Below are positions 15,556 to 33,886 of a stretch of DNA of 64,000 nucleotides, piece after piece. The notes beneath the pieces were generated by a model. The model was not told the origin of the DNA. It did not search any database and worked only from the letters and a program-made list of their open reading frames with translations. Positions within the stretch are counted from its first letter, which is position 1. The number at the start of each line of letters is the position of its first letter. The DNA is from Macrostomum lignano (taxonomy: Eukaryota): contig NIVC01001500.1 of assembly GCA_002269645.1 (NCBI GenBank), positions 186,001 through 250,000 of the forward strand, read 5' to 3'. Made by a program: the position numbers and the translations under genes.

Positions 15556-18360
15556 TTCTGTGACTCATGGGTTACTGAGTTGCAAAGGATTAATTGGAGG
15601 TTGTTGGTAGTCCAAGCATCAAGGGGGGGAGTGAGGTTTAGGGTTAAGCCATGGCTTTAAAGGGAAGTTTTGATGATATCTTAGGCTAGCCAGCTGGCTT
15701 TGAGGTCTGATGTTTTCATGCTTTAAACATCATTTTTCTTAGGAAACTTAGTAACTATACAAGGTCAAAAGCTGCATGTGATTTTTTGATTTATTGATAA
15801 AAAATGTGATTCCTTTCTTTGCGCGAAGATTACTAGTGCGTATTTTTAAACCGCCGTCTAGATTGCAACCCACTGCAAGGGTTCCATACGAGATTATATC
15901 AGTAGATTTCGAATCCAGAGTTTCTATACGTTATTTTTACACCTATGCTCTAGAGATTCCACTTAAAAGCTAACAATTATTAACTTAAAAAATAATCTTA
16001 AATCATTTAGAATAAACAAATTAGATTGTTTTAAGCAGGCAAAAGCTTAAACAAAGAGTGCATAGTCATATAGGTGTAATATAGCCGAATAAATATGATT
16101 TATGACCAATGAAAGGCACAGAATCGCCCAATGGTAAAAACACCAAACTAGTACAAAACTGCGCCACTTAGAAGTCACAAAATACAAAAAAATCGAATGA
16201 CAGAAAAGGAAAACACTGCAGCAATGACAAAATAAATCAAACAAGGCAGTTATTAAAATTATCAACTTAGAAATAACAGCAAGCATTATCTATGCAGCTA
16301 GTATAACTCTGAAATATAAAAAACCCAAGATCATGTCAATCATTCTTACAACAACAGCCGTCTTGGCTGTTCAGTCTCATAATTGACCCACAGGATATAC
16401 TCCGCAATAGACGGAGCGGAGGTGAACTGAGAGTTTAATTAACCAGTAGCTTATATTTTCTGTATGACAACCACTGTTCAGATTGGATGCAACTTACCGA
16501 AGAGACAAAACTAATAAGCATATGCAATCATTGATCGATTCGAAAAGACCTGATAATTAATGAACAAAACGACACGAGGGGAAATTAATAACAATATGTT
16601 AAATTCATAAAAAATTACAAGAATACCGAGAGGCATTTTTTGCAAAGAGTGTATTCCATAGAACACAGTTGTTGCAGTCGATTTGGTAACAACAGCCAGT
16701 CAAAATGATTGCGCTAATTTTGTGTAGGTTGGTTCATAAGTAGCCGAACACAATTATAAACACAAAAATACGCTCGTATGCATTAATTTTTTAATCTATC
16801 ATTATTTCTTTTATGTATTGTTAACAAAACTTGTTAGTTTTTAAGTTTTACATTTTCAGTTATATAGGATTTGGGTTCGGCTACTTATGCACCATTCTGT
16901 ATTATAAATTCCATTGCATTCCATCAATAATACATGCATATAGGCAATAAATGACTGACTCGGAACAACGATGCACTCAAAATATGAAAGTCAATTGTGA
17001 CTTTATAAAAGTACGCAACAGACTTGCAATTTGCGCATTCAGGCATTTACCAAGCAAAGCTGAAAGCGTTAAACTTGGGTGAACAAGACATAGCGGACAA
17101 AAAACCCAGGGCATCGGAGCGCTGTTTAAAAAACAATCGATAAACTTCAGTCTCCAAACGGGCCAACCAATCCAATAAGGGAAAAGCTAAATTCCGCTTA
17201 GGCCAAAGAAATAAAGTTAGCCGTTAGTGGGGGTGGGGGCAAGACAGAAAGGAGGGGCGGAGTGGGGTTGGTGCAGTGGTGCTGATTGCTGATAAAAAAG
17301 GCTGACCAAATTACTCCTACCCTGCCGGCTAAATAGCAATAAAACTTGTTTAAAGTCTACAAGGAACGGGGGTGGTGGCCGGAAGGGGTGAGACGTGCCT
17401 GTGGGTTAAGGTTAAAAATCGATATCTCGCCTAACGAAACCTACCCTAGAAAGCTACGAGACGAGTCTGGGGCCTGTTCCGTGCGATATAATGCAATTAA
17501 ATTTTAATTTGTGATGCTTAAAGTCCTACCTAAACACTGCCAAAGCCATATGCACGTCGTAAAGCATTTGTAATTAAGAGTCACACTTAAATTTATTGTC
17601 AACTTAATTTTCACCAGCTTTTTACTGGGACAAAATCTAAATTTAATTACTAGAAACCCACAACATACCACTTTAAGTAGCGAAATACGAACATTTTATT
17701 ACAAAATTTACTATAAAAAACAAAACTTTATAATGATAATGATCAACAATGGAAATTAATAGAAATCAATTACAAAAGCACCTTATAAGGCTTTGCTTCA
17801 GATATCCGATAATATTGAGCTATTGAGCTAATGCTATTATAAGTAGGTAAGTAAGTAGTATAGAAAAAGACGCTTCTAGACCCAGAGCACTTTTTTAATG
17901 ACCGTTTTAAGGGTCTAGAGGGGGGACACGGGGGGTAAATAAAAAAACACATCTAAACACCATTAATACATCTAATCAAATAATGCACTTAACACCCCCC
18001 ACCCTTTTCAGTTTCGGCGAAATTGGGTGTTTAAAAAACAGCTTAAAATTAGCAAAAATGGCTTAAAAATCGCTAAAAACACCAAAAAATCGCAAAATTT
18101 AGGCTTAAAAAAACCGATTTTAAAAACAGCAAAATTTGCCATATCGAAAGCAAAAATGTCTTAAAACAGCTAAAATCGTTATAAAAACATACAAATCGCA
18201 AAAGAAAATTAAAAAAGCCTCCATAAAAAACAATATCTAAATCCAAAAATTTTTAATCCACAAAAATAACACATAAATCCATAATTAATTCCACATAAGC
18301 TCCAAACTAACGTCCACAGAATCGCACCATAGGCACGCGAACCTTCGGCTCGATCGTACC

Positions 18361-20279
18361 GAAATCCACAATAGCAACCGAAATCCACAATAGCAACCGA
18401 AATCCACAATAGCAACCGAAATCCACAATAGCAACCGAAATCCACAATAGCAACCGAAATCCACAATAGCAACCGAAATCCACAATAGCAACCGAAATCC
18501 ACAATAGCAACCGAAATCCACAATAGCAACCGAAATCCACAATAGCAACCGAAATCCACAATAGCAACCGAAATCCACAATAGCAACCGAAATCCACAAT
18601 AGCAACCGAAATCCACAATAGCAACCGAAATCCACAATAGCAACCGAAATCCACAATAGCAACCGAAATCCACAATAGCAACCGAAATCCACAATAGCAA
18701 CCGAAATCCACAATAGCAACCGAAATCCACAATAGCAACCGAAATCCACAATAGCAACCGAAATCCACAATAGCAACCGAAATCCACAATAGCAACCGAA
18801 ATCCACAATAGCAACCGAAATCCACAATAGCAACCGAAATCCACAATAGCAACCGAAATCCACAATAGCAACCGAAATCCACAATAGCAACCGAAATCCA
18901 CAATAGCAACCGAAATCCACAATAGCAACCGAAATCCACAATAGCAACCGAAATCCACAATAGCAACCGAAATCCACAATAGCAACCGAAATCCACAATA
19001 GCAACCGAAATCCACAATAGCAACCGAAATCCACAATAGCAACCGAAATCCACAATAGCAACCGAAATCCATAACAGCAACCGGAATCCATAACAGCAAC
19101 CGGAATCCATAACAGCAACCGGAATCCATAACAGCAACCGGAATCCATAACACCAACCAAAATCCATAACACCAACCAAAATCCATAACAGCAACCGGAA
19201 TCCATAACACCAACCAAAATCCATAACACCAACCAAAATCCATAACAGAAACCGGAAGCCATATTAGTAATCGGAATCCATAACAAAAACCGGAATCCAT
19301 AACACCAACCAAAATCCATAACAGCAACCGGAATCCATAACAGAAACCGGAATCCATAATAGAAACCGGAATCCATAACAGAAACCGGAATCCATAACAG
19401 AAACCGGAATCCATAACAGAAACCGGAATCCATAACAGAACCCGGAATCCATAACAGAAACCGGAATCCATAACAGAACCCGGAATCCATAACAGAAACC
19501 GGAAGCCATATTAGTAATCGGAATCCATAACAGCAACCGGAATCCACAATAGCAACCGGAATCCATAACAGAACCCGGAATCCATAACAGAACCCGGAAT
19601 CCATAACAGAAACCGGAATCCATAACAGAACCCGGAATCCATAACAGAAACCGGAAGCCATATTAGTAATCGGAATCCATAACAAAAACCGGAATCCATA
19701 ACAGAAACCGGAATCCATAATAGAAACCGGAATCCATAACAGAAACCGGAATCCATAACAGAAACCGGAATCCATAACAGAACCCGGAATCCATAACAGA
19801 AACCGGAATCCATAACAGAACCCGGAATCCATAACACCAACCAAAATCCATAACAGAAACCGGAAGCCATATTAGTAATCGGAATCCATAACAAAAACCG
19901 GAATCCATAACAGAAACCGGAATCCACAATAGCAACCAAAATCCATAACAAAAACCAAAATCCATAACAGAACCCGGAATCCATAACAGAAACCGGAAGC
20001 CATATTAGTAATCGGAATCCATAACAAAAACCGGAATCCATAACAGAAACCGGAATCCACAATAGAAACCGGAATCCACAATAGCAACCGAAATCCATAA
20101 CAAAAACCAAAATCCATAACAGAACCCGGAATCCATAACAGAAACCGGAATCCATAACAGCAACCGGAATCCATAACAGCAACCGGAATCCACAATAGCA
20201 ACCGGAATCCACAATAGCAACCGGAATCCATAACAGCAACCGGAATCCATAACAGCAACCGGAATCCACAATAGCAACC
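18361..20279 (+). repeat. 19-bp tandem array, left arm, 101 units (37 identical distal units, then variant units)
   Basis: GAAATCCACAATAGCAACC x37 (18361-19063), then GGAATCCATAACAGAAACC-type variants; 1919 bp = 101x19. Confidence 0.97.
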
Positions 20280-20323
20280 GGAAACCATACTACCTCTAAA
20301 ACTTTAAATTTTTTTCCATAAAA

Positions 20324-20983
20324 ATGGACAGAGATAATTTTGGCGGTAACCACTGCGATAAACACACTTTAAAAATGTTAAAAAGAGCAATAAAAAAAAT
20401 AAAGGCCACCATCGAAGGATCGATAGACTGCAATCGCATTTTGCCACAACTACCACAATCTCTAAAAGAGTTAAGTACATTATTAAAAAACAATACAGAG
20501 ATGCAGAAGCAAATTCCAGATGGTTTAGAAGACTGGATGGAGGGCTTAGATATTGCAATATTAAATAACAGCATATATCTGTTAACAGAATTATGGTCTA
20601 CAACTAACCAATATGTTATTAAAATTAGAGAAAAAGAAAAGAAAGAAAAAGTCCAAACGGAAGCAGAAAGACAAAAAAGAATTTATAAAGAATCTTTAAG
20701 TTTATATAAAGCGGGAATTATTACAACCATACAATATGGTACTAAGCTCCAACAGATTAAACAAATGGTTAATTATTTACTTACTTTTACAAACGATCGC
20801 CCCGAAGGGTCGCGGCCTTCGCCCGATAGGACAAACGCTGCGAACTTACGGTACGACCCGAAGGAGATAAGAAATAAAGTTAAAGAAGATCTTATATTTC
20901 TACATAATAATATTAAATTACTAAAAGAAATAGTAGAAGATATTAACAGCCTTCTACCAACACCGGAGGAAACAGATATCTAA
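20324..20983 (+). CDS. Element ORF-A, 219 aa, unknown function; paralog of the N-terminus of ORF-B
   Basis: Intronless ORF with AAAAATGGA start context; identical mirror copy at 30339-30998. Confidence 0.8.
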   Translation: MDRDNFGGNHCDKHTLKMLKRAIKKIKATIEGSIDCNRILPQLPQSLKELSTLLKNNTEMQKQIPDGLEDWMEGLDIAILNNSIYLLTELWSTTNQYVIKIREKEKKEKVQTEAERQKRIYKESLSLYKAGIITTIQYGTKLQQIKQMVNYLLTFTNDRPEGSRPSPDRTNAANLRYDPKEIRNKVKEDLIFLHNNIKLLKEIVEDINSLLPTPEETDI

Positions 20984-21017
20984 AAATAAGAAATTGTTAA
21001 TTTTTTTATCTATAAAA

Positions 21018-23951
21018 ATGGACACAAATAATTTTAGCGAAAACCAATTCGACAAAATCTTACTACATTCCATAAAAAAAGAAATAATAAATATTAATAG
21101 GTTAATAGATATCTCTATATCGCATTACACCATAGAGCCACAAATAGAAAAAAATATATATAATTTAAATGTTTTAATCGATAAACAGCTAAAGGATATT
21201 AATAATATTAATATATTAGATGGGATAAACACGTGGTTATGTTCCATATCGATGGCAACCATAACAAGAGATATTACTCTTCTAAAGGAAATGCTAGAAA
21301 TAGGTACTAATTATCTTACAAAGATTAGCAAACTTATTCCAGACGATTCCAACGAGGAACTAGAGGAACTAATAATAGATATAGAAGATAGCATGGAGGA
21401 AACAGAGGAAATAGAAGATCGCTCCGACGAAGACTCCGACGAAGACTCCGACGAAGAAATAGAGCAACCAACAGAACCAACACAGCAACCAACAGAACCA
21501 ACACAGCAACCAATAGAACCAACACAGCAACCAATAGAACCAACACGCCCACTAGAGAAAAACCAAATCGACCCCAAAGCTTTTGGACTTAGATCTGGAA
21601 CCGATAAAACCCTGCTCGAGAGAATAGGGCACAAATTACTAATCGAAAACCTAAAGCAAAATAACCTTTTATCCGACGTCGGTAAAATCGACTACACATA
21701 TAAAGAACCAAAACTAAAAGACCAAGTAGCATTAACCGATATATTTTGCGATAATATAATGCTTATTAAAATAACATCTGCACGATCGATAAGAAACTAC
21801 AAAGAAGGAGATGTAATTCCAACCAGATTTTTAATTACCGAACAACTAACTGGAGCCTACAATTCGATTATTCGAGACGCCTTTCGCGATTTTGTAACAC
21901 AACCACATTCTGTAAAGGCAAAACAAGCACTAAATTTACATACCAACACCCACGAGGATTCGATTAACCAGCAGACGATTGCAGGAATTAGAAAGGTTAT
22001 CGCAAAAGACATGGACAGAATTAATGCAAACTTTGGAAAGGATTATGTTGGAGTTACCTACAAGGTAGAATTAGCAGACATACAATTAAAAGAACTTTTA
22101 AATAAATTACCACAATTATTAGAACATCTTAAGCAAGACTATTACTATTTGTTGGACTTCGATATAACACAAGATTTAAATGGTATTTTTAATAAATACG
22201 AGGCGATGGACACACTTAGTGCCATCTTTTCTAACGAGTACAAAATAGTTTCTAACGATAGAACTGTTGGAAGGGACTGCCTTACTTGGTTATACTCTAA
22301 TTGTCGGATAAAGATATATAATAAATTTGTCTGCCAACTAACATCCGGAGGAGTAACAAAGACTCTTGGTAATAACATTTATAATTTTATTAACTGTCCA
22401 GATAAACGATTAAAAGAAACATTCTTAAATCCACTTGCTAAGGAGCATGGTTTTACACGGTTGGAAGCAACAATTTATAATTATAACTACTTTGGTAATA
22501 ACAGACTCTTTAATCCATTATTAGATGCAACGGATGTTATATTGCAACAAAAGGAACATTTACAATATCTACAATTTTATTCCGTATCCTTTACTAAAAT
22601 GTGGAGTAAAATTTCTAACGAGATAGTTAATTCTTGCATAGTTAAATCTCCAGACTTTTTACAAATAGCTTATTATGGCAATTCCTTAACGAGTAAGATA
22701 ATTGGTACACAGATAAAGCTTGTGGATAAAACAGAAGAGCATAAAGAGAGTTTTTTAAATTATGCAATCGCAGCATGTAGTTATAACCAGCTCCCCATTA
22801 ATGTCCTCCTATTGGAACAAGACCCAAAAAATAAAGCCATCGTTAATTGCACACATAAAACATTTTTAAAGCAAGGAAAAACATTTTTTACACAGAGCAC
22901 ATCGCTTTATGCAAAAATTCCAAAAGATGTTAATATAGAAGAGCTGGGATTAATTAGCACAGAAAATATAAAACCAGAAGTGTTAAGAGTTAGAAAGAAT
23001 GCCACAGCACCCCCAATTTACAAATTTACAGAGATTAATAATATAACAACCCCATTCTTAAAACCACTTGCAAAGATTGCAGAAGAATTAGAAGCTGTAG
23101 AACAAGAGCACCAGAAAACTATTACTATTGCAAAACAAAGAAAAGTAATACAAACATATATAGAAAAAAACAAGAAAGAAGTCGACCATGCTAAATACAT
23201 TAAGGATTTATGCGCAGCATTTAAATTAGAACCAGACAATTTTAAAGAAAACACAAAATACGAGATAATTGCTGCACACTTTAACCTCGACATAAAATAT
23301 CCAATTGTGTTATTAATGGCTAAAATGGCGGATGGGGAATTAAAACCATTTTATCTTAAAGGTATTAATAAACAAAAATTTATTAACTTCTATAAAAATA
23401 AAATATTAGATAAGGAAACAACGTTTGGACATTTTACATACACTAATAAATATAAGCGAAATGTTGCTATAGTCTATATCCTAAACACAACAATTCTAAA
23501 CATAACAACAGGTAAACAAATCTCTTACAAAGGAAACACGTTTACAGCAATCGATGGGTTTAAAACCAATTACAACGATCTTAACGAAGAAATTATTAAA
23601 AAAGAAGATATACAAGGTGCACGCGCGGTAAGAAATATTTTAGAAATGGAGGACAAAAGTATACTAAACAATATAAAAGTAGCACATTGTAAACATATAG
23701 AGGAACTAGAAGATGGATTCGAGGACAACGTTACAACCATTATGGTTACGATACATAGAAATAAAACACGATATATTTTTAAACTAGCAACAAAAGAAGA
23801 CCCATTTGTATCCAACGAGTTTATGGAAGAAGAGATAAGAAAGCAAAGATTAAATCTCGATTATAAATTCCATTTAACAGTCGCTAATTATAAAATAACC
23901 AAAAATCGAAAAAAGGAAAGAAGTGTTTATTTAGTAAGTCTTTTGCAATAA
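21018..23951 (+). CDS. Element ORF-B, 977 aa from the first ATG; putative Rep_trans/gpII-like rolling-circle initiator, with acidic and PTEPTQQ-repeat linker
   Basis: Long intronless ORF with motifs DFDITQD (22155), RIKIYNK (Tyr codon 22317) and TRLEA (22458). The family call is by motif resemblance only. Confidence 0.8.
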   Translation: MDTNNFSENQFDKILLHSIKKEIININRLIDISISHYTIEPQIEKNIYNLNVLIDKQLKDINNINILDGINTWLCSISMATITRDITLLKEMLEIGTNYLTKISKLIPDDSNEELEELIIDIEDSMEETEEIEDRSDEDSDEDSDEEIEQPTEPTQQPTEPTQQPIEPTQQPIEPTRPLEKNQIDPKAFGLRSGTDKTLLERIGHKLLIENLKQNNLLSDVGKIDYTYKEPKLKDQVALTDIFCDNIMLIKITSARSIRNYKEGDVIPTRFLITEQLTGAYNSIIRDAFRDFVTQPHSVKAKQALNLHTNTHEDSINQQTIAGIRKVIAKDMDRINANFGKDYVGVTYKVELADIQLKELLNKLPQLLEHLKQDYYYLLDFDITQDLNGIFNKYEAMDTLSAIFSNEYKIVSNDRTVGRDCLTWLYSNCRIKIYNKFVCQLTSGGVTKTLGNNIYNFINCPDKRLKETFLNPLAKEHGFTRLEATIYNYNYFGNNRLFNPLLDATDVILQQKEHLQYLQFYSVSFTKMWSKISNEIVNSCIVKSPDFLQIAYYGNSLTSKIIGTQIKLVDKTEEHKESFLNYAIAACSYNQLPINVLLLEQDPKNKAIVNCTHKTFLKQGKTFFTQSTSLYAKIPKDVNIEELGLISTENIKPEVLRVRKNATAPPIYKFTEINNITTPFLKPLAKIAEELEAVEQEHQKTITIAKQRKVIQTYIEKNKKEVDHAKYIKDLCAAFKLEPDNFKENTKYEIIAAHFNLDIKYPIVLLMAKMADGELKPFYLKGINKQKFINFYKNKILDKETTFGHFTYTNKYKRNVAIVYILNTTILNITTGKQISYKGNTFTAIDGFKTNYNDLNEEIIKKEDIQGARAVRNILEMEDKSILNNIKVAHCKHIEELEDGFEDNVTTIMVTIHRNKTRYIFKLATKEDPFVSNEFMEEEIRKQRLNLDYKFHLTVANYKITKNRKKERSVYLVSLLQ

Positions 23952-24843: not shown

Positions 24844-24904
24844 TTTTTACAATATATTTTTTATTATAAAATTTGTTTATTTTGCAACACACCAAGCTTG
24901 TCTT

Positions 24905-25247: not shown

Positions 25248-25280
25248 CTCCTAATATAACCTAAAATACTAAAAATATTA

Positions 25281-25620
25281 AATAAAACCAATTATAGTTA
25301 AATAATACCAATTATAGTTAAATAATACCAATTATAGTTAAGTGCGTTCCGCGCTCGCGTGTTTTTATCTCTTTTAACTGTCTTGTATGCCCTGTGTTGT
25401 GCGCCCATGGGCGCTGCGCGCCCACGGTGGTATTCTTTTTTATATTTTATATTTTATATTTTATATTTTATATTTTATATTTTATATTTTATATTTTATA
25501 TTTTAATTTTATATTTTATATTTTATATTTTATATTTTATATTTTATATATTTTATATATTTTATATATTTTATATATTTTATATTTTTTATATTTTATA
25601 TATTTTATATATTTTATGTG
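25281..25620. promoter_or_regulatory. Origin-like module: 3x20-bp direct repeats (25281-25340), GC palindrome GCGCCCATGGGCGC (25401-25414), pure A/T tract (~25436-25617)
   Basis: The motifs are read directly; the origin function is inferred. Confidence 0.5.
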
Positions 25621-25651
25621 TTGTATTTGGTGGAGAAAAAAAGTAAACCTT

Positions 25652-25990
25652 TTAATCGTCGATATCTCGCAAAACAACAACCCTTTCTTTCTTTTTAGAC
25701 TCGTTGGACTTTAACTCGAACGCATACAAAATAAATCTGTAGTTGTAATTTATTTTTTCGATTTGTTTCTCGAAATAATTGTTAGAAATATAAAGCTCTT
25801 TTGTGTTTTCTATCTGGAAAATATAGCGCATGCGGTTCCTAAACTTCTTTCTCCCTTGTGCAACAACAAAATATACTCCTGGTGGAAGGGATTCTAATCT
25901 TTTGCAGTTTTGTGTTATTAACTTACATTGGAGTTGTTTTAATATCCAATCTTGGGGGACATCTTTATCGAACTCGTGGATGGTATCCAT
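25652..25990 (-). CDS. Element ORF-E, 112 aa from the AAAAATGGA start (139 aa from the upstream ATG); single copy; homologous to the ORF-B C-terminus
   Basis: CKRLESL..G..RNRMRYIF..SN..KKERV versus ORF-B CKHIEEL..G..RNKTRYIF..SN..KKERSV. Confidence 0.75.
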   Translation of the reverse strand: MDTIHEFDKDVPQDWILKQLQCKLITQNCKRLESLPPGVYFVVAQGRKKFRNRMRYIFQIENTKELYISNNYFEKQIEKINYNYRFILYAFELKSNESKKKERVVVLRDIDD

Positions 25991-26019
25991 TTTTTTATTA
26001 TTAAAATATATTATGTAAA

Positions 26020-26418
26020 ATGGAAGATAATGTTGTGCATGTAGTAACTTTACATCCTTTGGTAGCTCCAAATATTAATACTAAAAAAGACTGCTTTTAT
26101 GTAACTAAAGAAAAGCTTTCTTTAAAAAGATTCTACTTAAAAGATAACGTGGAGGATATAAGAATATATCTTAAAAAACCAAAAATAAAGTGCGATGGTT
26201 GCTATCCTTATGGTGTTTGGCTTGTTAAGATATATGTTAGAAAATTAGTTGGTCTCCCACACATACCGATGCCTCCAGCGTTGTTGGGTGTGGAGGAGTT
26301 CGAAGATGGGAAAGTTATGTCGACTATTAGCAGTGTGGATATAATTAGTGTGGAAGAAACATTTAAGGTTACACCACTAATTAATAAAAAAAATAAAGTT
26401 ATGGATCTGTTGGTGTAA
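26020..26418 (+). CDS. Element ORF-C, 132 aa, complete copy; unknown function
   Basis: AAAATGGA start; the upstream motif is shared with ORF-D. Confidence 0.75.
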   Translation: MEDNVVHVVTLHPLVAPNINTKKDCFYVTKEKLSLKRFYLKDNVEDIRIYLKKPKIKCDGCYPYGVWLVKIYVRKLVGLPHIPMPPALLGVEEFEDGKVMSTISSVDIISVEETFKVTPLINKKNKVMDLLV

Positions 26419-26479
26419 AAGACAAGCTTGGTGTGTTGCAAAATAAACAAATTTTATAATAAAAAATATATTGTAAAAA

Positions 26480-26881
26480 ATGGATCGAGGATTAATCCAT
26501 AAAGTTATTTTGGATGCGAACTCCTGTCCATCTACCAAGGATGTAATATTTTATGTAACTAAAGAAGAATTAAATGTAGAGGATAAAATTCTTTTTAAAA
26601 TGGACTCTCTCCAAGATATAAATGTGTATACGCGGATGTCTAAAAAGCATGGATATCCTTGTTACCCCTATGCTATTTATTTAATTAATAATTATATAAG
26701 AAACCTACTTGCCCTTCCAACAATTAGCATGCCAATGTATATGCAGGACGAGTTCGATGCTCGCAAAGCTACATCCGTGGTTAAAAATGTGGAAATTATT
26801 AATTTAGATAGTTTAAGAAGTTGTTGTTTAAAAGATAAAGATGTTGTAAAACAAAACTTAAATAATTTAATTTGTGTATAA
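26480..26881 (+). CDS. Element ORF-D, right-arm copy, 133 aa
   Basis: Mirror of 24442-24843. Confidence 0.75.
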   Translation: MDRGLIHKVILDANSCPSTKDVIFYVTKEELNVEDKILFKMDSLQDINVYTRMSKKHGYPCYPYAIYLINNYIRNLLALPTISMPMYMQDEFDARKATSVVKNVEIINLDSLRSCCLKDKDVVKQNLNNLICV

Positions 26882-27371
26882 ACATGTTTTTATTTGGATA
26901 TTTCGTATTTTGTATTTGTATTTGTGTTTGTAAAAAAATAAAAATATATTTATTGCTAAAGACTTACTAAATAAACACTTCTTTCCTTTTTTCGATTCTT
27001 GGTTATTTTATAATTAGCGACTGTTAAACGGAATTTATAATCGAGATTTAATCTTTGGTTTCTTATCTCTTCTTCCATAAACTCGTTGGATACAAATGGG
27101 TCTTCTTTTGTTGCTAGTTTAAAAATATATCGTTACCACAATGGTTGTAACGTTGTCCTCGAATTAAAAATGTGGAAATTATTAATTTAGATAGTTTAAG
27201 AAGTTGTTGTTTAAAAGATATAGAAGTTGTAAAACAAAACTTAAATAATTTAATTTAATTTGTGTATAAACATGTTTTTATTTTTTATTTGGATGTTTGG
27301 TATTCGCATTTCGCATTCTGTATTTGCATTTCGTATTTGGTATTCGCATTTGTAAAAAAATAAAAATATAT

Positions 27372-30304
27372 TTATTGCAAAAGACTTACTAAATAAACAC
27401 TTCTTTCCTTTTTTCGATTTTTGGTTATTTTATAATTAGCGACTGTTAAATGGAATTTATAATCGAGATTTAATCTTTGCTTTCTTATCTCTTCTTCCAT
27501 AAACTCGTTGGATACAAATGGGTCTTCTTTTGTTGCTAGTTTAAAAATATATCGTGTTTTATTTCTATGTATCGTAACCATAATGGTTGTAACGTTGTCC
27601 TCGAATCCATCTTCTAGTTCCTCTATATGTTTACAATGTGCTACTTTTATATTGTTTAGTATACTTTTGTCCTCCATTTCTAAAATATTTCTTACCGCGC
27701 GTGCACCTTGTATATCTTCTTTTTTAATAATTTCTTCGTTAAGATCGTTGTAATTGGTTTTAAACCCATCGATTGCTGTAAACGTGTTTCCTTTGTAAGA
27801 GATTTGTTTACCTGTTGTTATGTTTAGAATTGTTGTGTTTAGGATATAGACTATAGCAACATTTCGCTTATATTTATTAGTGTATGTAAAATGTCCAAAC
27901 GTTGTTTCCTTATCTAATATTTTATTTTTATAGAAGTTAATAAATTTTTGTTTATTAATACCTTTAAGATAAAATGGTTTTAATTCCCCATCCGCCATTT
28001 TAGCCATTAATAACACAATTGGATATTTTATGTCGAGGTTAAAGTGTGCAGCAATTATCTCGTATTTTGTGTTTTCTTTAAAATTGTCTGGTTCTAATTT
28101 AAATGCTGCGCATAAATCCTTAATGTATTTAGCATGGTCGACTTCTTTCTTGTTTTTTTCTATATATGTTTGTATTACTTTTCTTTGTTTTGCAATAGTA
28201 ATAGTTTTCTGGTGCTCTTGTTCTACAGCTTCTAATTCTTCTGCAATCTTTGCAAGTGGTTTTAAGAATGGGGTTGTTATATTATTAATCTCTGTAAATT
28301 TGTAAATTGGGGGTGCTGTGGCATTCTTTCTAACTCTTAACACTTCTGGTTTTATATTTTCTGTGCTAATTAATCCCAGCTCTTCTATATTAACATCTTT
28401 TGGAATTTTTGCATAAAGCGATGTGCTCTGTGTAAAAAATGTTTTTCCTTGCTTTAAAAATGTTTTATGTGTGCAATTAACGATGGCTTTATTTTTTGGG
28501 TCTTGTTCCAATAGGAGGACATTAATGGGGAGCTGGTTATAACTACATGCTGCGATTGCATAATTTAAAAAACTCTCTTTATGCTCTTCTGTTTTATCCA
28601 CAAGCTTTATCTGTGTACCAATTATCTTACTCGTTAAGGAATTGCCATAATAAGCTATTTGTAAAAAGTCTGGAGATTTAACTATGCAAGAATTAACTAT
28701 CTCGTTAGAAATTTTACTCCACATTTTAGTAAAGGATACGGAATAAAATTGTAGATATTGTAAATGTTCCTTTTGTTGCAATATAACATCCGTCGCATCT
28801 AATAATGGATTAAAGAGTCTGTTATTACCAAAGTAGTTATAATTATAAATTGTTGCTTCCAACCGTGTAAAACCATGCTCCTTAGCAAGTGGATTTAAGA
28901 ATGTTTCTTTTAATCGTTTATCTGGACAGTTAATAAAATTATAAATGTTATTACCAAGAGTCTTTGTTACTCCTCCGGATGTTAGTTGGCAGACAAATTT
29001 ATTATATATCTTTATCCGACAATTAGAGTATAACCAAGTAAGGCAGTCCCTTCCAACAGTTCTATCGTTAGAAACTATTTTGTACTCGTTAGAAAAGATG
29101 GCACTAAGTGTGTCCATCGCCTCGTATTTATTAAAAATACCATTTAAATCTTGTGTTATATCGAAGTCCAACAAATAGTAATAGTCTTGCTTAAGATGTT
29201 CTAATAATTGTGGTAATTTATTTAAAAGTTCTTTTAATTGTATGTCTGCTAATTCTACCTTGTAGGTAACTCCAACATAATCCTTTCCAAAGTTTGCATT
29301 AATTCTGTCCATGTCTTTTGCGATAACCTTTCTAATTCCTGCAATCGTCTGCTGGTTAATCGAATCCTCGTGGTGTTGGTATGTAAATTTAGTGCTTGTT
29401 TTGCCTTTACAGAATGTGGTTGTGTTACAAAATCGCGAAAGGCGTCTCGAATAATCGAATTGTAGGCTCCAGTTAGTTGTTCGGTAATTAAAAATCTGGT
29501 TGGAATTACATCTCCTTCTTTGTAGTTTCTTATCGATCGTGCAGATGTTATTTTAATAAGCATTATATTATCGCAAAATATATCGGTTAATGCTACTTGG
29601 TCTTTTAGTTTTGGTTCTTTATATGTGTAGTCGATTTTACCGACGTCGGATAAAAGGTTATTTTGCTTTAGGTTTTCGATTAGTAATTTGTGCCCTATTC
29701 TCTCGAGCAGGGTTTTATCGGTTCCAGATCTAAGTCCAAAAGCTTTGGGGTCGATTTGGTTTTTCTCTAGTGGGCGTGTTGGTTCTATTGGTTGCTGTGT
29801 TGGTTCTATTGGTTGCTGTGTTGGTTCTGTTGGTTGCTGTGTTGGTTCTGTTGGTTGCTCTATTTCTTCGTCGGAGTCTTCGTCGGAGTCTTCGTCGGAG
29901 CGATCTTCTATTTCCTCTGTTTCCTCCATGCTATCTTCTATATCTATTATTAGTTCCTCTAGTTCCTCGTTGGAATCGTCTGGAATAAGTTTGCTAATCT
30001 TTGTAAGATAATTAGTACCTATTTCTAGCATTTCCTTTAGAAGAGTAATATCTCTTGTTATGGTTGCCATCGATATGGAACATAACCACGTGTTTATCCC
30101 ATCTAATATATTAATATTATTAATATCCTTTAGCTGTTTATCGATTAAAACATTTAAATTATATATATTTTTTTCTATTTGTGGCTCTATGGTGTAATGC
30201 GATATAGAGATATCTATTAACCTATTAATATTTATTATTTCTTTTTTTATGGAATGTAGTAAGATTTTGTCGAATTGGTTTTCGCTAAAATTATTTGTGT
30301 CCAT
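27372..30304 (-). pseudogene. Right-arm copy of ORF-B, split by a 1-bp deletion at ~29372
   Basis: Left ACCAACACCCACGAGG versus right ACCAACACCACGAGG; gives 357-aa and 646-aa ORFs. Could be a homopolymer sequencing error. Confidence 0.75.
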
Positions 30305-30338
30305 TTTTATAGATAAAAAAATTAACAATTTCTTATTT

Positions 30339-30998
30339 TTAGATATCTGTTTCCTCCGGTGTTGGTAGAAGGCTGTTAATATCTTCTACTATTTCTTTTA
30401 GTAATTTAATATTATTATGTAGAAATATAAGATCTTCTTTAACTTTATTTCTTATCTCCTTCGGGTCGTACCGTAAGTTCGCAGCGTTTGTCCTATCGGG
30501 CGAAGGCCGCGACCCTTCGGGGCGATCGTTTGTAAAAGTAAGTAAATAATTAACCATTTGTTTAATCTGTTGGAGCTTAGTACCATATTGTATGGTTGTA
30601 ATAATTCCCGCTTTATATAAACTTAAAGATTCTTTATAAATTCTTTTTTGTCTTTCTGCTTCCGTTTGGACTTTTTCTTTCTTTTCTTTTTCTCTAATTT
30701 TAATAACATATTGGTTAGTTGTAGACCATAATTCTGTTAACAGATATATGCTGTTATTTAATATTGCAATATCTAAGCCCTCCATCCAGTCTTCTAAACC
30801 ATCTGGAATTTGCTTCTGCATCTCTGTATTGTTTTTTAATAATGTACTTAACTCTTTTAGAGATTGTGGTAGTTGTGGCAAAATGCGATTGCAGTCTATC
30901 GATCCTTCGATGGTGGCCTTTATTTTTTTTATTGCTCTTTTTAACATTTTTAAAGTGTGTTTATCGCAGTGGTTACCGCCAAAATTATCTCTGTCCAT
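30339..30998 (-). CDS. Element ORF-A, right-arm copy, 219 aa
   Basis: Same translation as 20324-20983. Confidence 0.8.
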   Translation of the reverse strand: MDRDNFGGNHCDKHTLKMLKRAIKKIKATIEGSIDCNRILPQLPQSLKELSTLLKNNTEMQKQIPDGLEDWMEGLDIAILNNSIYLLTELWSTTNQYVIKIREKEKKEKVQTEAERQKRIYKESLSLYKAGIITTIQYGTKLQQIKQMVNYLLTFTNDRPEGSRPSPDRTNAANLRYDPKEIRNKVKEDLIFLHNNIKLLKEIVEDINSLLPTPEETDI

Positions 30999-31042
30999 TT
31001 TTATGGAAAAAAATTTAAAGTTTTAGAGGTAGTATGGTTTCC

Positions 31043-32847
31043 GGTTGCTATTGTGGATTCCGGTTGCTGTTATGGATTCCGGTTGCTGTTATGGATTCCG
31101 GTTGCTATTGTGGATTCCGGTTGCTATTGTGGATTCCGGTTGCTGTTATGGATTCCGGTTGCTGTTATGGATTCCGGTTTCTGTTATGGATTCCGGGTTC
31201 TGTTATGGATTTTGGTTTTTGTTATGGATTTCGGTTGCTATTGTGGATTCTGGTTTCTATTGTGGATTCCGGTTTCTGTTATGGATTCCGGTTTTTGTTA
31301 TGGATTCCGATTACTAATATGGCTTCCGGTTTCTGTTATGGATTCCGGGTTCTGTTATGGATTTTGGTTTTTGTTATGGATTTTGGTTGCTATTGTGGAT
31401 TCCGGTTTCTGTTATGGATTCCGGTTTTTGTTATGGATTCCGATTACTAATATGGCTTCCGGTTTCTGTTATGGATTTTGGTTGGTGTTATGGATTCCGG
31501 GTTCTGTTATGGATTCCGGTTTCTGTTATGGATTCCGGGTTCTGTTATGGATTCCGGTTTCTGTTATGGATTCCGGTTTCTGTTGTGGATTCCGGTTTCT
31601 GTTATGGATTCCGGTTTCTATTATGGATTCCGGTTTCTGTTATGGATTCCGGTTTTTGTTATGGATTCCGATTACTAATATGGCTTCCGGTTTCTGTTAT
31701 GGATTCCGGGTTCTGTTATGGATTCCGGTTTCTGTTATGGATTCCGGGTTCTGTTATGGATTCCGGGTTCTGTTATGGATTCCGGTTGCTATTGTGGATT
31801 CCGGTTGCTGTTATGGATTCCGATTACTAATATGGCTTCCGGTTTCTGTTATGGATTCCGGGTTCTGTTATGGATTCCGGTTTCTGTTATGGATTCCGGG
31901 TTCTGTTATGGATTCCGGTTTCTGTTATGGATTCCGGTTTCTGTTATGGATTCCGGTTTCTGTTATGGATTCCGGTTTCTATTATGGATTCCGGTTTCTG
32001 TTATGGATTCCGGTTGCTGTTATGGATTTTGGTTGGTGTTATGGATTCCGGTTTTTGTTATGGATTCCGATTACTAATATGGCTTCCGGTTTCTGTTATG
32101 GATTTTGGTTGGTGTTATGGATTTTGGTTGGTGTTATGGATTCCGGTTGCTGTTATGGATTTTGGTTGGTGTTATGGATTTTGGTTGGTGTTATGGATTC
32201 CGGTTGCTGTTATGGATTCCGGTTGCTGTTATGGATTCCGGTTGCTGTTATGGATTCCGGTTGCTGTTATGGATTTCGGTTGCTATTGTGGATTTCGGTT
32301 GCTATTGTGGATTTCGGTTGCTATTGTGGATTTCGGTTGCTATTGTGGATTTCGGTTGCTATTGTGGATTTCGGTTGCTATTGTGGATTTCGGTTGCTAT
32401 TGTGGATTTCGGTTGCTATTGTGGATTTCGGTTGCTATTGTGGATTTCGGTTGCTATTGTGGATTTCGGTTGCTATTGTGGATTTCGGTTGCTATTGTGG
32501 ATTTCGGTTGCTATTGTGGATTTCGGTTGCTATTGTGGATTTCGGTTGCTATTGTGGATTTCGGTTGCTATTGTGGATTTCGGTTGCTATTGTGGATTTC
32601 GGTTGCTATTGTGGATTTCGGTTGCTATTGTGGATTTCGGTTGCTATTGTGGATTTCGGTTGCTATTGTGGATTTCGGTTGCTATTGTGGATTTCGGTTG
32701 CTATTGTGGATTTCGGTTGCTATTGTGGATTTCGGTTGCTATTGTGGATTTCGGTTGCTATTGTGGATTTCGGTTGCTATTGTGGATTTCGGTTGCTATT
32801 GTGGATTTCGGTTGCTATTGTGGATTTCGGTTGCTATTGTGGATTTC
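31043..32847 (-). repeat. 19-bp tandem array, right arm, 95 units (30 identical distal units)
   Basis: 1805 bp = 95x19; homogeneous block 32278-32847. Confidence 0.97.
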
Positions 32848-33717
32848 GGTACGATCGAGCCGAAGGTTCGCGTGCCTATGGTGCGATTCTGTGGACGTTA
32901 GTTTGGAGCTTATGTGGAATTAATTATGGATTTATGTGTTATTTTTGTGGATTAAAAATTTTTGGATTTAGATATTGTTTTTTATGGAGGCTTTTTTAAT
33001 TTTCTTTTGCGATTTGTATGTTTTTATAACGATTTTAGCTGTTTTAAGACATTTTTGCTTTCGATATGGCAAATTTTGCTGTTTTTAAAATCGGTTTTTT
33101 TAAGCCTAAATTTTGCGATTTTTTGGTGTTTTTAGCGATTTTTAAGCCATTTTTGCTAATTTTAAGCTGTTTTTTAAACACCCAATTTCGCCGAAACTGA
33201 AAAGGGTGGGGGGTGTTAAGTGCATTATTTGATTAGATGTATTAATGGTGTTTAGATGTGTTTTTTTATTTACCCCCCGTGTCCCCCCTCTAGACCCTCA
33301 AAACGGTCATTAAAAAAGTGCTCTGGGTCCAGAAGCGTCTTTTTCTATACTACTTAAGTAGGTTGATATATTACATTCAAAATATAAACAAAAATGCTGT
33401 TCGTAGTAATACAAAATAAAACAAAAACACAGGATCGATGGGGAGAATGAGGAAAAGCAAACGGGAATACAAGACAATTGACGAACTTACCTAAAATGGC
33501 TGAAGCGCCTCGTCATCTAATTGAAAAAAAAACTCGCCACTCAGCATGCATAATGAAATGAAAATCAGCGAGATTGTTAAAAACAACTAAAATAATTAGC
33601 CGCTCAATCAGTCTGATCGGCGTTTTGTTTTTTTGTCGTCATTTTCCGAATTGCTCTCGACGACTTCGTTGACGGGACCAGCCTGGGCGGGGTCATTAGG
33701 AAATGGGATTGTGTTCA

Positions 33718-33868: not shown

Positions 33869-33886
33869 AATGAGCCGACAATTCAC

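What the first reader, a model, noticed from the sequence alone, without database searches (positions are those of the whole stretch)
17852..33356. 15.5-kb gene-bearing palindrome: candidate undescribed virus/plasmid-like replicon integrated in an animal genome
Seen: two ~7.3-kb arms in inverted orientation surround an 828-bp unique spacer. Symmetry ends abruptly at 17852/33356 and the flanks outside are unrelated. Each arm runs terminal hairpin, A-tracts, 19-bp array, ORF-A, ORF-B, then convergent ORF-D and ORF-C. The genes are intronless, AT-rich and tightly packed, unlike the GC-rich spliced host genes. Knowledge: Polintons carry pPolB, integrase and capsids; Helitrons carry Rep-helicase; TIR transposons do not normally duplicate their whole gene set in the TIRs. 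I recognise none of these hallmark genes here. Inference: this is either an integrated head-to-head replicative dimer of a ~8-kb hairpin/rolling-circle replicon, or a new foldback element class.
Basis: partly seen in the sequence, partly recalled or inferred. Interest (0 to 1): 0.95.

Follow-up and report, generated by a model that had tools for sequence, protein, structure and literature searches.

The report
Palindromic mobile element with nickase-like gene
A 15.5-kb mirror-image DNA insertion in an animal chromosome carries two copies of a gene whose protein resembles the DNA-nicking enzymes that bacterial plasmids use to copy themselves, which points to a kind of selfish DNA element not yet described in animals.

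Summary
Two near-identical inverted arms (17852-25247, 26076-33356) flank an 828-bp spacer, and symmetry stops to the base at both ends. Outside the 19-bp arrays the arms differ by 3 substitutions and one 1-base indel. A 9-nt direct repeat at the two junctions suggests the whole palindrome inserted as one unit.

The "terminal hairpin" is no more stable than shuffled sequence. No Polinton, Helitron, densovirus or DDE-transposase hallmark was found.

ORF-B belongs to a large unannotated family: 1,075 clusters at 50% identity. It occurs in insect chromosomes and AT-rich metagenome contigs. It is nearly absent from prokaryote genomes and was not found in plasmids, phages or IMG/VR.

Its core is predicted with high confidence (pLDDT 89) to have a TBP-like fold. 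The best structural matches are TBP and the Rep_trans initiator RepDE. It keeps the same ordered Asp / Tyr-Asn-Lys / Arg-x-Glu motifs, and OB-fold modules follow the core.

Distant relatives lie on inverted-repeat contigs, and two of them end in strong T-shaped hairpins.

Best reading: an integrated long-TIR (foldback-shaped) copy of an undescribed eukaryotic nick-and-displace replicon. The mechanism is inferred, not shown.

The parts
17852..33356 (.). Whole palindromic element (15,505 bp)
   Evidence: Inverted-repeat search; exact ends read
17840..17848 (+). Left copy of the 9-nt direct repeat TAAGTAGGT (candidate target-site duplication). It is separated from the element end by 3 nt.
   Evidence: a shared 9-mer of this kind is seen in 29 of 20,000 random pairs of host 18-mers
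33355..33363 (+). Right copy of the 9-nt direct repeat. It overlaps the last 2 nt of the element.
17852..25247 (+). Left arm (7,396 bp)
26076..33356 (-). Right arm (7,281 bp), the reverse complement of the left arm
17852..18357 (+). Left outer terminal domain (506 bp). It contains the weak 9-bp inverted repeat 17875-17883 / 17911-17919. The mirror copy is 32851-33356 and differs by 2 substitutions.
18016..18300 (+). Phased A-tract (predicted bent DNA) segment, period 10-10.5 bp. The mirror copy is about 32908-33192.
18358..20289 (+). Left 19-bp tandem array, 101.7 units. The outer block has 37 identical units; the inner block is heterogeneous.
31033..32850 (-). Right 19-bp tandem array, 95.7 units. 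The outer block has 30 identical units; the inner pattern matches the left arm.
20324..20983 (+). ORF-A, left copy (219 aa). It is helical and a paralogue of the N-terminal module of ORF-B.
   Evidence: BLASTP E 1e-9
30339..30998 (-). ORF-A, right copy (219 aa, identical)
20994..23951 (+). ORF-B, left copy, intact (985 aa from TTG; first ATG at 21018). Residues ~1-205 form a helical, acidic N-terminal extension. Residues 205-690 are the TBP-like core. Residues 692-743 form a long helix. Residues ~750-985 are OB-fold modules.
21606..23063 (+). ORF-B core domain (residues 205-690): predicted TBP-like fold carrying the invariant D253, D390, D394, K440, Y442, K444, R489 and E491
   Evidence: AF2 pLDDT 89.4, pTM 0.89; Foldseek; conservation; shared motif pattern with pT181-family Rep_trans
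27372..30328 (-). ORF-B, right copy: broken by one frameshift (a single-base length difference) plus one substitution relative to the left copy
24442..24843 (-). ORF-D, left copy (133 aa), convergent with ORF-B; an orphan
26480..26881 (+). ORF-D, right copy (133 aa)
24905..25291 (-). ORF-C, left copy (128 aa), a paralogue of ORF-D. Its first ~15 codons lie in the spacer.
   Evidence: BLASTP E 3e-19
26020..26418 (+). ORF-C, right copy (132 aa), with a different N-terminus encoded in the spacer
25248..26075 (.). Unique middle domain (spacer, 828 bp, 26% G+C)
25278..25341 (+). 3.2 direct repeats of 20 bp (iteron-like)
25342..25432 (+). G+C-rich island containing a perfect 14-bp palindrome at 25401-25414. 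It is a candidate origin or nick region by inference only; the fold z-score is just -1.4.
25438..25628 (+). (TTTTATA)n run of 27 units, a very A+T-rich stretch
25652..26071 (-). Spacer ORF (139 aa), a paralogue of the C-terminal OB module of ORF-B. It has the same orientation as the right-arm ORF-A and ORF-B.
   Evidence: BLASTP E 1e-9; tblastn hits to the C-termini of homologues

Best explanation
This is an integrated copy of an undescribed kind of eukaryote-associated selfish DNA element with a foldback shape: very long gene-bearing terminal inverted repeats around a short unique centre.

Its signature gene, ORF-B, encodes a large protein. Its core is a TBP-fold, Rep_trans-like tyrosine nicking-joining enzyme. 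Its C-terminus carries built-in OB-fold single-strand-DNA-binding modules.

Inferred mechanism: the protein nicks one strand at a specific site, stays attached through Tyr442, and the freed 3' end primes strand-displacement synthesis while the OB modules coat the displaced strand. On a linear molecule with inverted or hairpin ends, this 'rolling-hairpin' style of copying naturally gives inverted dimers and long TIRs. That would explain two almost identical arms around a centre that looks like the remaining unique end of an ~8-kb monomer (arm plus spacer).

The element then entered the host chromosome as one unit. Its two ends are precise and identical, and they are flanked by a 9-nt direct repeat.

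Shown: the anatomy, the protein family and its distribution, the predicted fold, the conserved motif set, and the hairpin ends of distant relatives.

Inferred: the nicking activity, the replication mode, the way the palindrome arose, and the way it integrated.
For: Anatomy:
- A 9-nt direct repeat sits at both junctions (chance about 0.15%).
- Both ends start at the same nucleotide.

ORF-B family:
- 22 word-indexed homologues of ~780 aa were found. They include annotated single genes in Schistocerca americana, Planococcus citri and Cacopsylla.
- The exhaustive profile search gives 1,075 clusters at E<=1e-3.
- The family was found once in 185,579 prokaryote genomes, on a 3.5-kb MAG contig. It was not found in PLSDB plasmids, phages or IMG/VR.

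Fold:
- The core model has pLDDT 89.4 and pTM 0.89.
- The best PDB matches are TBP 1mp9 (E 4e-3, prob 0.91) and the Rep_trans initiator RepDE 4cwc/4cwe (E 1.2e-2, prob 0.57-0.82).
- BFVD matches are TBP-fold proteins, including Inoviridae proteins.
- Rep_trans enzymes are known to have the TBP-like fold. Their catalytic residues are Y191 with D46, D142 and E214 (PMC13107129, PMC13595969).

Motifs:
- The pT181-family alignment is invariant at R140-x-D142-x-A-x-D146, Y191-N-K and R212-x-E214.
- The ORF-B family has D390-x-T-x-D394, K440-x-Y442-N-K444 and R489-L-E491 in the same order, all on predicted beta strands.
- Across up to 146 representatives: Y442 146/146, D253 115/115, D390 142/145, D394 144/145, E491 141/143.
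- One composite pattern hits 5/6 Rep_trans proteins and 87/127 family members. It hits 1/25,400 shuffled proteins and 0 in 96,796 aa of six-frame host sequence.
- The only hhalign local match aligns the two Tyr motifs.

OB modules: the C-terminus matches Teb1 OB folds (E 5.7e-4), PrgE and LEF-3. Rep_trans relaxases are known to work with OB-fold partners (PMC12614216).

Relatives:
- L036 and L034 end exactly in T/Y-shaped hairpins (dG -28.8 and -30.9 kcal/mol, z -9.8 and -9.2, 0/200 shuffles).
- L033 (9.5 kb) has 640-nt TIRs that start with the same stem.
- L012, L013, L017 and the start of L036 show inverted-repeat junctions.
- L013 and L026 pair the ORF-B homologue with a D5_N/DUF5906 or a PriCT_2+DEAD primase-helicase. 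A nickase plus a helicase is the functional pair of eukaryotic RCR viruses.
- L003 and the window both place OB-module paralogues downstream of ORF-B.
Against: - No sequence-level link to Rep_trans was found. There is no Pfam, NCBIfam or PHROG hit for ORF-B or any relative. hhalign is not significant.
- Foldseek E-values are modest. The TBP fold also occurs in non-catalytic DNA binders: TBP itself and NCLDV VETF-L-like proteins are among the top hits.
- No 3-D superposition of the active-site residues could be made here.
- The window's own termini have no significant hairpin.
- The relatives that do have hairpins share only ~25% identity over the core.
- A flanking direct repeat is typical of DDE-type staggered cuts, not of known RCR enzymes.
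- The window element has no helicase, polymerase or capsid gene.
- ORF-A, ORF-C and ORF-D are orphans.
- Copy number, empty sites, expression and extrachromosomal forms are unknown, and the host species is unresolved.
- Everything rests on one assembled contig.
Confidence: 0.5

Rival explanations
1. It is a foldback-type cut-and-paste transposon moved in trans by a DDE (for example Mutator-like) transposase encoded elsewhere. On this reading ORF-B and the other ORFs are cargo or DNA-binding accessory genes that TIR elongation pulled into the arms, and ORF-B is a TBP-like DNA binder rather than a nickase.
For: The architecture matches the published foldback scheme: outer TIR domain, variable tandem-repeat block, inner domain, middle domain. 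Foldback TSDs of 8-10 bp fit the 9-nt repeat seen here (PMC4079207). The ends are precise and identical. The array copy number differs between the arms. The top fold matches include non-catalytic TBP-fold proteins.
Against: No DDE transposase lies in or near the element. ORF-B is the only gene shared by many inverted-repeat or hairpin-ended contigs, so it looks like their core gene rather than cargo. The invariant Asp/Tyr/Glu set matches a catalytic constellation. Foldback TIRs are not known to carry a duplicated full gene set.
Confidence: 0.2
2. It is a host inverted segmental duplication (fold-back repair of a break) of a domesticated or dead insertion. The palindrome would then be a chromosomal accident and say nothing about the element's life cycle.
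For: Fold-back priming after a break gives inverted duplications with a unique spacer of hundreds of bp (general knowledge). The arm boundary cuts through ORF-C. The arms are 99.9% identical outside the arrays. Solo, non-palindromic homologues exist in Schistocerca and Planococcus.
Against: A post-insertion fold-back would not create a second precise terminus next to a matching 9-nt flank repeat. Palindromic or inverted-repeat architecture recurs in unrelated metagenomic relatives. The left ORF-B is intact over 985 codons in 31% G+C DNA.
Confidence: 0.12
3. It is an assembly artefact: a chimeric or fold-back long read, or a collapsed repeat, produced a false palindrome.
For: Palindromes are a known long-read artefact. 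There is only one contig and no read data are available here.
Against: The arms are not identical: arrays of 37 vs 30 outer units plus one extra inner unit, 3 substitutions and 1 indel. There is an 828-bp unique centre with its own ORF. Different host genes lie on the two sides (Sulfatase, Sulfotransfer_2). The junction repeats match. The same architecture is seen in independent metagenome assemblies.
Confidence: 0.05
4. It is a diverged member of a known element or virus family (Polinton/Maverick, Helitron, densovirus or bidnavirus, or an NCLDV fragment).
For: Polintons and parvoviruses have TIRs or hairpins. BFVD fold hits include iridovirus and marseillevirus VETF-L-like proteins. A weak DUF816 (baculovirus) hit was seen for the spacer ORF (E 0.003, below the cut-off).
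Against: Pfam, PHROGs, NCBIfam and PDB sequence searches found no pPolB, integrase, capsid, protease, packaging ATPase, HUH Rep or Pif1 helicase. No viral protein appears among the sequence homologues.
Confidence: 0.03

Closest known systems
Rep_trans (PF02486) rolling-circle initiators of bacterial plasmids, filamentous phages and ICE relaxases (pT181 RepC, RepD/RepDE; PDB 4CWC, 4CWE)
   Same: The catalytic core is predicted to have the TBP-like fold, and RepDE is among the top PDB matches. Both have the same ordered motif set, D-x-[A/T]-x-D ... [K/R]-x-Y-N-K ... R-L-E. Both are associated with OB-fold ssDNA binders (PMC12614216).
   Different: There is no HMM or profile-level sequence match. 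The protein is 2.5-3 times larger, with fused OB modules and a helical extension. The family is eukaryote-associated and nearly absent from prokaryotes. The carrier is a linear-looking element bounded by inverted repeats, not a small circle.
Rep-Arvir (DUF7845) TBP-fold initiators of archaeal pleolipoviruses and plasmids (PMC13107129)
   Same: A divergent TBP-fold tyrosine endonuclease family that can be recognised only by structure and by conserved Tyr and acidic residues, found outside bacteria.
   Different: The Tyr context differs (KHYYM there, K-x-Y-N-K here, which is closer to bacterial Rep_trans). There is no wHTH domain, and the hosts differ. No DUF7845 hit was found.
Foldback (FB-like) transposons: Drosophila FB, Tetris, Galileo, nematode Tm1 (PMC4079207, PMC3573991, PMC3169594)
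   Same: Very long TIRs built from an outer domain, a variable tandem-repeat block and an inner domain around a middle domain. The array copy number differs between arms. There is a flanking direct repeat of 8-10 bp.
   Different: The arms here carry a complete duplicated gene set. There is no Mutator- or P-type DDE transposase. The conserved gene is a TBP-fold protein.
Parvovirus/densovirus (and bidnavirus) rolling-hairpin replicons and their inverted dimer replicative forms
   Same: Relatives L034 and L036 end in T/Y-shaped hairpins. The pairing of a tyrosine nickase with an SF3-type helicase is seen in L013. The window has a palindromic 'dimer' geometry.
   Different: The nickase is not HUH. 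No capsid gene was recognised. The sizes are 9-15 kb. The window's termini lack a significant hairpin, and the centre is an 828-bp unique segment rather than a hairpin axis.
Helitrons (eukaryotic rolling-circle transposons)
   Same: A eukaryotic mobile element presumed to use a tyrosine nickase and strand displacement.
   Different: Helitrons use a HUH Rep fused to a Pif1 helicase. They have no TIRs and make no target-site duplication. None of these features is found here.

Membership tests
Rep_trans (PF02486) RCR initiators | Significant match to the family HMM or profile | tested here: not met
   No PF02486 hit at E<=1 for ORF-B, 18 homologues or 9 distant relatives. hhalign against a pT181-family alignment gave E 0.23 and 0.049.
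Rep_trans (PF02486) RCR initiators | TBP-like fold of the catalytic domain | tested here: met
   The AF2 core model has pLDDT 89.4 and pTM 0.89. The top PDB matches are TBP (E 4e-3) and RepDE (E 1.2e-2). BFVD top hits are TBP-fold proteins (E 1.9e-4). The E-values are modest.
Rep_trans (PF02486) RCR initiators | Catalytic Tyr in a Y-x-x-K context plus acidic metal ligands, in the family's order | tested here: met
   This was tested at the motif level only. Y442 is invariant in 146/146 and sits in K-x-Y-N-K. D253, D390, D394 and E491 are >=98% conserved. The order and internal spacing match the pT181-family invariants. Spatial coincidence with Y191/D46/D142/E214 was not checked.
Rep_trans (PF02486) RCR initiators | Site-specific nicking with a covalent 5'-phosphotyrosine link | not testable with these tools
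   This is a biochemical property.
Rep_trans (PF02486) RCR initiators | Carried by a small circular plasmid or phage or by an ICE of bacteria | tested here: not met
   The element lies in an animal contig between spliced host genes. The family was found once in 185,579 prokaryote genomes and was not found in plasmids or phages.
Foldback transposons | Long TIRs with an outer domain, internal tandem repeats and an inner domain around a middle domain | tested here: met
   scheme as in PMC4079207.
Foldback transposons | Target-site duplication of about 8-10 bp | tested here: inconclusive
   The 9-nt repeat TAAGTAGGT is at both junctions, with a chance of about 0.15%. It is offset by 3 nt on the left and overlaps the element by 2 nt on the right. 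The element end itself resembles the target.
Foldback transposons | Mutator- or P-type DDE transposase in autonomous copies, or no coding capacity | tested here: not met
   There are five ORF families in the element, and none has a DDE or any Pfam match.
Foldback transposons | Multiple dispersed copies with the same ends | not testable with these tools
   The host genome is not available. There is no other copy in the 64-kb window.
Parvoviridae / rolling-hairpin viruses | HUH NS1/Rep with SF3 helicase and a jelly-roll capsid protein | tested here: not met
   No such domains were found by Pfam, PHROGs or PDB sequence search.
Parvoviridae / rolling-hairpin viruses | Terminal hairpin telomeres | tested here: not met
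   The window termini give z -0.78. The feature is met only in the distant relatives L034 and L036.
Polinton/Maverick | Protein-primed PolB, retroviral-type integrase, capsid proteins, protease, packaging ATPase | tested here: not met
   None was detected.
Helitron | HUH Rep fused to Pif1 helicase; no TIRs and no TSD | tested here: not met
   There are no HUH or helicase domains. The element has 7.3-kb TIRs and a flanking repeat.

The most novel reading that the evidence does not exclude
ORF-B defines a third-domain (eukaryotic) branch of the TBP-fold rolling-circle endonucleases. The literature up to 2026 treats these enzymes as confined to bacteria, with the distinct Rep-Arvir family in archaea. 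With this branch comes a whole new class of linear, hairpin- or long-TIR-ended DNA replicons, either episomes or viruses with an unrecognised capsid. They would circulate in arthropods and other eukaryotes, replicate by a rolling-hairpin-like route with a non-HUH nickase, and integrate precisely into chromosomes. The near-identical arms and the intact 985-codon ORF suggest a very recent, possibly still active, copy in this host.
Probability: 0.4. Interest if true: 0.92.

Novelty: new variant of a known kind. Interest (0 to 1): 0.8.

Why it matters
- Rolling-circle and rolling-hairpin elements of eukaryotes (CRESS viruses, parvoviruses, Helitrons) are all thought to use HUH nucleases. The structurally unrelated TBP-fold Rep_trans enzymes are described as restricted to bacteria, and were extended to archaea only in 2026 (PMC13107129).
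- A large eukaryote-associated family with the same fold and catalytic motif set would fill the missing domain. It sits on inverted-repeat and hairpin-ended elements and is integrated in animal chromosomes.
- It would add a new enzyme class to the eukaryotic mobilome.
- It would give names to more than a thousand 'hypothetical protein' clusters, including annotated insect genes.
- It also offers a concrete case for how gene-bearing palindromes and foldback structures arise.

Tried and rejected
Searches that found nothing:
- Pfam, PHROGs, NCBIfam and PDB sequence searches of all five ORFs, and of ORF-B relatives, gave nothing above threshold.
- hhalign of the family against a pT181-family alignment was not significant.
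- ORF-C/ORF-D had no homologue among 5.8 billion proteins.
- ORF-A, ORF-C and ORF-D gave no tblastn hit in any fetched locus or elsewhere in the window.
- IMG/VR, PLSDB plasmids and phage genomes hold no relatives of ORF-B.
- Exact-product look-ups of ORF-A and ORF-B in public assemblies found nothing, so no second copy or host identity could be obtained.
- Rfam and tRNA scans of the window were empty.
- No large tandem arrays like the 19-bp array exist in relatives.

Host questions left open:
- Host identification through the sulfatase exon gave only 48% identity, to vertebrate, amphioxus and spider proteins.
- A search for the remaining exons of the sulfotransferase gene found nothing.

Ideas rejected:
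- The terminal hairpin as a telomere: folding is no better than shuffles.
- The G+C-rich palindrome in the spacer as a clearly stable hairpin: z is only -1.4.
- A conserved terminal motif: the 9-mer CAGAGCACT is shared with L033/L036, but L034 differs, so the match is probably chance.
- The exact 127-nt and 77-nt terminal inverted repeats of L013, L017 and L036 as true TIR lengths. They equal common assembler k-mer sizes and only show that a longer inverted repeat exists.
- A bacterial origin via the 'Baumannia' MAG hit: that scaffold is chimeric, with a run of N and eukaryote-type microsatellites.
- Homology between ORF-C/D and the 128-aa convergent ORFs of L033, L034 and L036: only 15-20% identity.

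Full report
**1. The observation**

The inverted-repeat search finds two arms, 17852-25247 and 26076-33356, around a unique 828-bp spacer (25248-26075). The 3.3 kb next to the spacer are 100% complementary and the next 3.5 kb are 98% complementary. Reading both ends shows that the symmetry starts at exactly the same nucleotide on each side and that the flanks are unrelated.

Each arm contains the following, in order:
- a 506-bp outer domain;
- a 19-bp tandem array of 101.7 (left) or 95.7 (right) units;
- ORF-A (219 aa);
- ORF-B (985 aa);
- the convergent paralogues ORF-D and ORF-C.

Outside the arrays the arms differ by three substitutions and one single-base indel in about 5.46 kb. The indel breaks the right copy of ORF-B with one frameshift.

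The arrays have an outer block of 37 (left) or 30 (right) identical units. This is followed by the same heterogeneous inner pattern in both arms.

The A-tracts between the end and the array are phased at 10-10.5 bp, beyond all 300 shuffles. The gene-bearing part has 27-35% G+C, against 45-58% around the host exons.

The one weak item is the 'terminal hairpin'. It is a 9-bp inverted repeat with a 27-nt loop, and its folding energy is ordinary (z -0.78). It is imperfect in the right arm.

**2. Surroundings and integration**

The left side of the window has exons of an arylsulfatase / steryl-sulfatase-like gene. About 0.5 kb from the right end lies the first coding exon of a Sulfotransfer_2 gene on the minus strand. 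The best sulfatase relatives are only 48% identical and come from vertebrates, amphioxus and a spider. So the host is an animal, but the species was not resolved.

The 9-mer TAAGTAGGT occurs at both junctions, at 17840-17848 and 33355-33363. Random pairs of host 18-mers share a 9-mer in 29 of 20,000 trials. The repeat is offset by 3 nt on the left and overlaps the element by 2 nt on the right. It is therefore a candidate target-site duplication, not a proven one.

Together with the two precise, identical ends, it argues that the whole palindrome entered this site as one unit. It also argues against a post-insertion fold-back and against a simple assembly artefact. The non-identity of the arms points the same way.

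**3. The genes are modules of one protein plus an orphan pair**

- ORF-A is a paralogue of the N-terminal helical extension of ORF-B (E 1e-9).
- The spacer ORF (25652-26071, minus strand) is a paralogue of the C-terminal module of ORF-B (E 1e-9). It points the same way as the right-arm ORF-A and ORF-B.
- ORF-C and ORF-D are paralogues of each other (E 3e-19). They have no homologue in 5.8 billion proteins.

The arm boundary falls inside ORF-C, so its two copies have different N-termini. Read from the right end, 'arm plus spacer' therefore looks like an ~8.1-kb monomer: end, A-tracts, array, ORF-A, ORF-B, ORF-D/ORF-C, OB-module ORF.

The spacer also holds 3.2 iteron-like 20-bp repeats and a G+C-rich island with a perfect 14-bp palindrome. 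It also holds a (TTTTATA)27 run. This arrangement is reminiscent of a replication origin. That is inference only, and the palindrome is not significantly stable.

**4. ORF-B belongs to a large, unannotated, eukaryote-associated family**

No Pfam, PHROG, NCBIfam or PDB sequence match exists for any ORF.

The word-indexed search returned 22 homologues of about 780 aa. They include annotated 'uncharacterized protein' genes of Schistocerca americana, Planococcus citri and Cacopsylla melanoneura. P. citri has a tandem cluster of at least three.

The exhaustive profile search found 1,075 clusters (50% identity) at E<=1e-3 and 281 at E<=1e-30.

Motif-guided scans gave these results:
- 38 JGI metagenome loci with 23-49% G+C;
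- none in IMG/VR;
- one 3.5-kb MAG contig among 185,579 prokaryote species genomes;
- none in PLSDB plasmids or phage genomes.

The 'Baumannia' MAG hit sits on a scaffold that joins bacterial and insect-like DNA across a run of N.

**5. What ORF-B looks like**

With the family alignment, the core (residues 205-690) is modelled at pLDDT 89.4 and pTM 0.89.

Foldseek results:
- Against the PDB, the top hits are TATA-binding proteins (1mp9, E 4e-3) and the staphylococcal rolling-circle initiator RepDE (4cwc/4cwe, E 1.2e-2).
- Against BFVD, the hits are TBP-fold proteins, including viral TBPs, NCLDV VETF-L-like proteins and Inoviridae proteins (best E 1.9e-4).
- With the full-length model, the C-terminal third matches OB-fold ssDNA binders: Teb1 (E 5.7e-4), PrgE and LEF-3.

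The literature states three relevant points (PMC13107129, PMC13595969):
- Rep_trans enzymes have exactly this TBP-like fold.
- RepDE uses Y191 with D46, D142 and E214.
- The family 'appears restricted to bacteria', with the distinct Rep-Arvir family in archaea.

I built a pT181-family alignment from plasmid records. Its invariant residues are R140-x-D142-x-A-x-D146, Y191-N-K and R212-x-E214.

The ORF-B family has D390-x-T-x-D394, K440-x-Y442-N-K444 and R489-L-E491, in the same order and all on predicted beta strands. An upstream invariant D253 is also present.

Conservation across up to 146 representatives:

| Residue | Conserved in |
|---|---|
| Y442 | 146/146 |
| D253 | 115/115 |
| D390 | 142/145 |
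| D394 | 144/145 |
| K440 | 145/146 |
| E491 | 141/143 |

One composite pattern gives these counts:

| Test set | Matches |
|---|---|
| pT181-family Rep_trans proteins | 5 of 6 |
| ORF-B family members | 87 of 127 |
| Shuffled family proteins | 1 of 25,400 |
| Six-frame host sequence (96,796 aa) | 0 |

This pattern was chosen after the fact.

Profile-profile comparison is not significant, but its only local match aligns the two tyrosine motifs.

I conclude that ORF-B most likely is a TBP-fold, Rep_trans-like tyrosine nicking enzyme with fused OB-fold modules. It fails the sequence test for membership of PF02486 itself. A non-catalytic TBP-like DNA binder is not excluded.

**6. Relatives show that inverted repeats and hairpin ends are a family trait**

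- L033 (9.5 kb) is bounded by 640-nt imperfect TIRs (94%). Going inward from the end, it has two 423-bp tandem repeats, the ORF-B homologue and a small convergent ORF. That is the same order as in the window.
- L036 and L034 carry homologues of the same subgroup (about 25% identity to ORF-B, with all motif residues kept). Both end exactly in T/Y-shaped hairpins with 22-23-bp stems: dG -28.8 and -30.9 kcal/mol, z -9.8 and -9.2, none of 200 shuffles as stable. Their stem sequences differ.
- L033 begins with the inner strand of the L036 stem.
- L036 starts, and L012 ends, at palindrome centres with 63- and 414-nt loops.
- L013 and L017 carry k-mer-sized terminal inverted repeats, which betray longer ones.
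- L013 and L026 pair the homologue with a D5_N/DUF5906 or a PriCT_2+DEAD primase-helicase.
- L003 places two OB-module paralogues downstream of ORF-B, like the spacer ORF here.
- Solo copies without inverted repeats also exist, as in Schistocerca.

**7. Mechanism (inferred)**

Known facts about related systems frame the inference. T-shaped terminal hairpins, plus a tyrosine nickase and a helicase, are the parts list of rolling-hairpin replication in parvoviruses, where the nickase is a HUH enzyme (established knowledge). Rep_trans enzymes nick, bind the 5' end through tyrosine and let a host polymerase displace the strand (PMC13107129). Rep_trans relaxases cooperate with OB-fold proteins (PMC12614216).

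The most economical reading is that this family copies linear, inverted-repeat-ended DNA by nick-primed strand displacement. That route readily yields inverted dimers and TIR extension. On this reading, the window holds such a long-TIR or dimer form, integrated as a unit.

Several things do not fit neatly:
- a 9-nt flanking repeat is not what known RCR enzymes leave;
- the window ends lack a strong hairpin;
- the ~100-unit arrays have no known role.

The anatomy equally matches the published foldback-transposon scheme: outer domain, variable tandem block, inner domain, middle domain and 8-10-bp duplications (PMC4079207). The main rival is therefore mobilisation in trans by a DDE transposase, with ORF-B as a passenger. 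I rate this lower because ORF-B is the only gene common to the inverted-repeat and hairpin contigs.

**8. Comparison, novelty and verdict**

The element is not a member of Polinton, Helitron, Parvoviridae or any DDE superfamily. The defining genes were tested and are absent.

It works most like two known things: a Rep_trans-type replicon in its enzyme, and a foldback or rolling-hairpin element in its DNA architecture. I found no paper describing a eukaryotic TBP-fold RCR enzyme or this protein family.

I file it as a new variant of known kinds, with about 0.4 probability that it represents a new class of eukaryotic replicon. Confidence in the overall best explanation is 0.5. Interest is 0.8.

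The broken right copy of ORF-B is reported only as one frameshift.

Noticed in passing
L001 (GCA_018224525.1 JAGTUS010000002.1) 1-22358: A scaffold of a 'Candidatus Baumannia cicadellinicola' MAG joins bacterial genes (HSP20, band-7, ThiG/ThiH) to an insect-like stretch. The join crosses a run of N and AT/GT microsatellites. The insect-like stretch holds the ORF-B homologue P0003 and a 326+109-aa ORF pair on the other strand. The scaffold looks chimeric.
   Followed up: partly
L052 (CAZYCV010000212.1) and L018, last ~110 nt: The only 'prokaryotic' hit is a 3.5-kb contig binned into an Acidobacteria MAG. Its end is identical to a JGI metagenome contig. Both carry TTTTGGG-type repeats about 25 nt from the contig end, which suggests a eukaryotic (possibly protist) origin and mis-binning.
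   Followed up: no
L003 (Logan SRR21069158) 9-5143: An ORF-B homologue of 1,203 aa has a long low-complexity insertion in the middle. Two ORFs (181 and 299 aa) follow it and are paralogues of its C-terminal OB module.
   Followed up: partly
L049 (Planococcus citri OX465510.1) and proteins P0014, P0017, P0024, P0026: The mealybug has at least three tandem, same-strand paralogues of ORF-B (LOC135836840, LOC135836843, LOC135836844). They are annotated as spliced genes with several isoforms, which may indicate domestication or annotation across decayed copies.
   Followed up: no
window 15000-15547, 33720-33863, 34531-36000, 8410-9013, 37675-38877: The host DNA around the element is unusually rich in mini- and microsatellites: 29-bp x19, 21-bp x7, 31-bp x49, a CTGT-type array, and ~60-nt coding-looking repeats. 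None is related to the element's 19-bp unit.
   Followed up: no
window 33883-34308 (minus strand): The first coding exon of a Sulfotransfer_2 gene covers only profile positions 11-79 of 252. It points towards the element, and no further exon was found in the window. The element may lie in this gene's first intron, or the gene may be truncated.
   Followed up: partly
L002 (Schistocerca americana CM038243.1) 5190-7836: A 2.6-kb nested palindrome of mariner-like fragments lies 2 kb upstream of the solo ORF-B homologue. It is unrelated to the ORF-B family.
   Followed up: no
window 17883-17891; L033 6-14; L036 5587-5595 and 5645-5653: The 9-mer CAGAGCACT lies about 30 nt from the window element's ends and also within the terminal hairpin stem of L033 and L036. 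L034 has a different stem, so the match is probably chance.
   Followed up: partly
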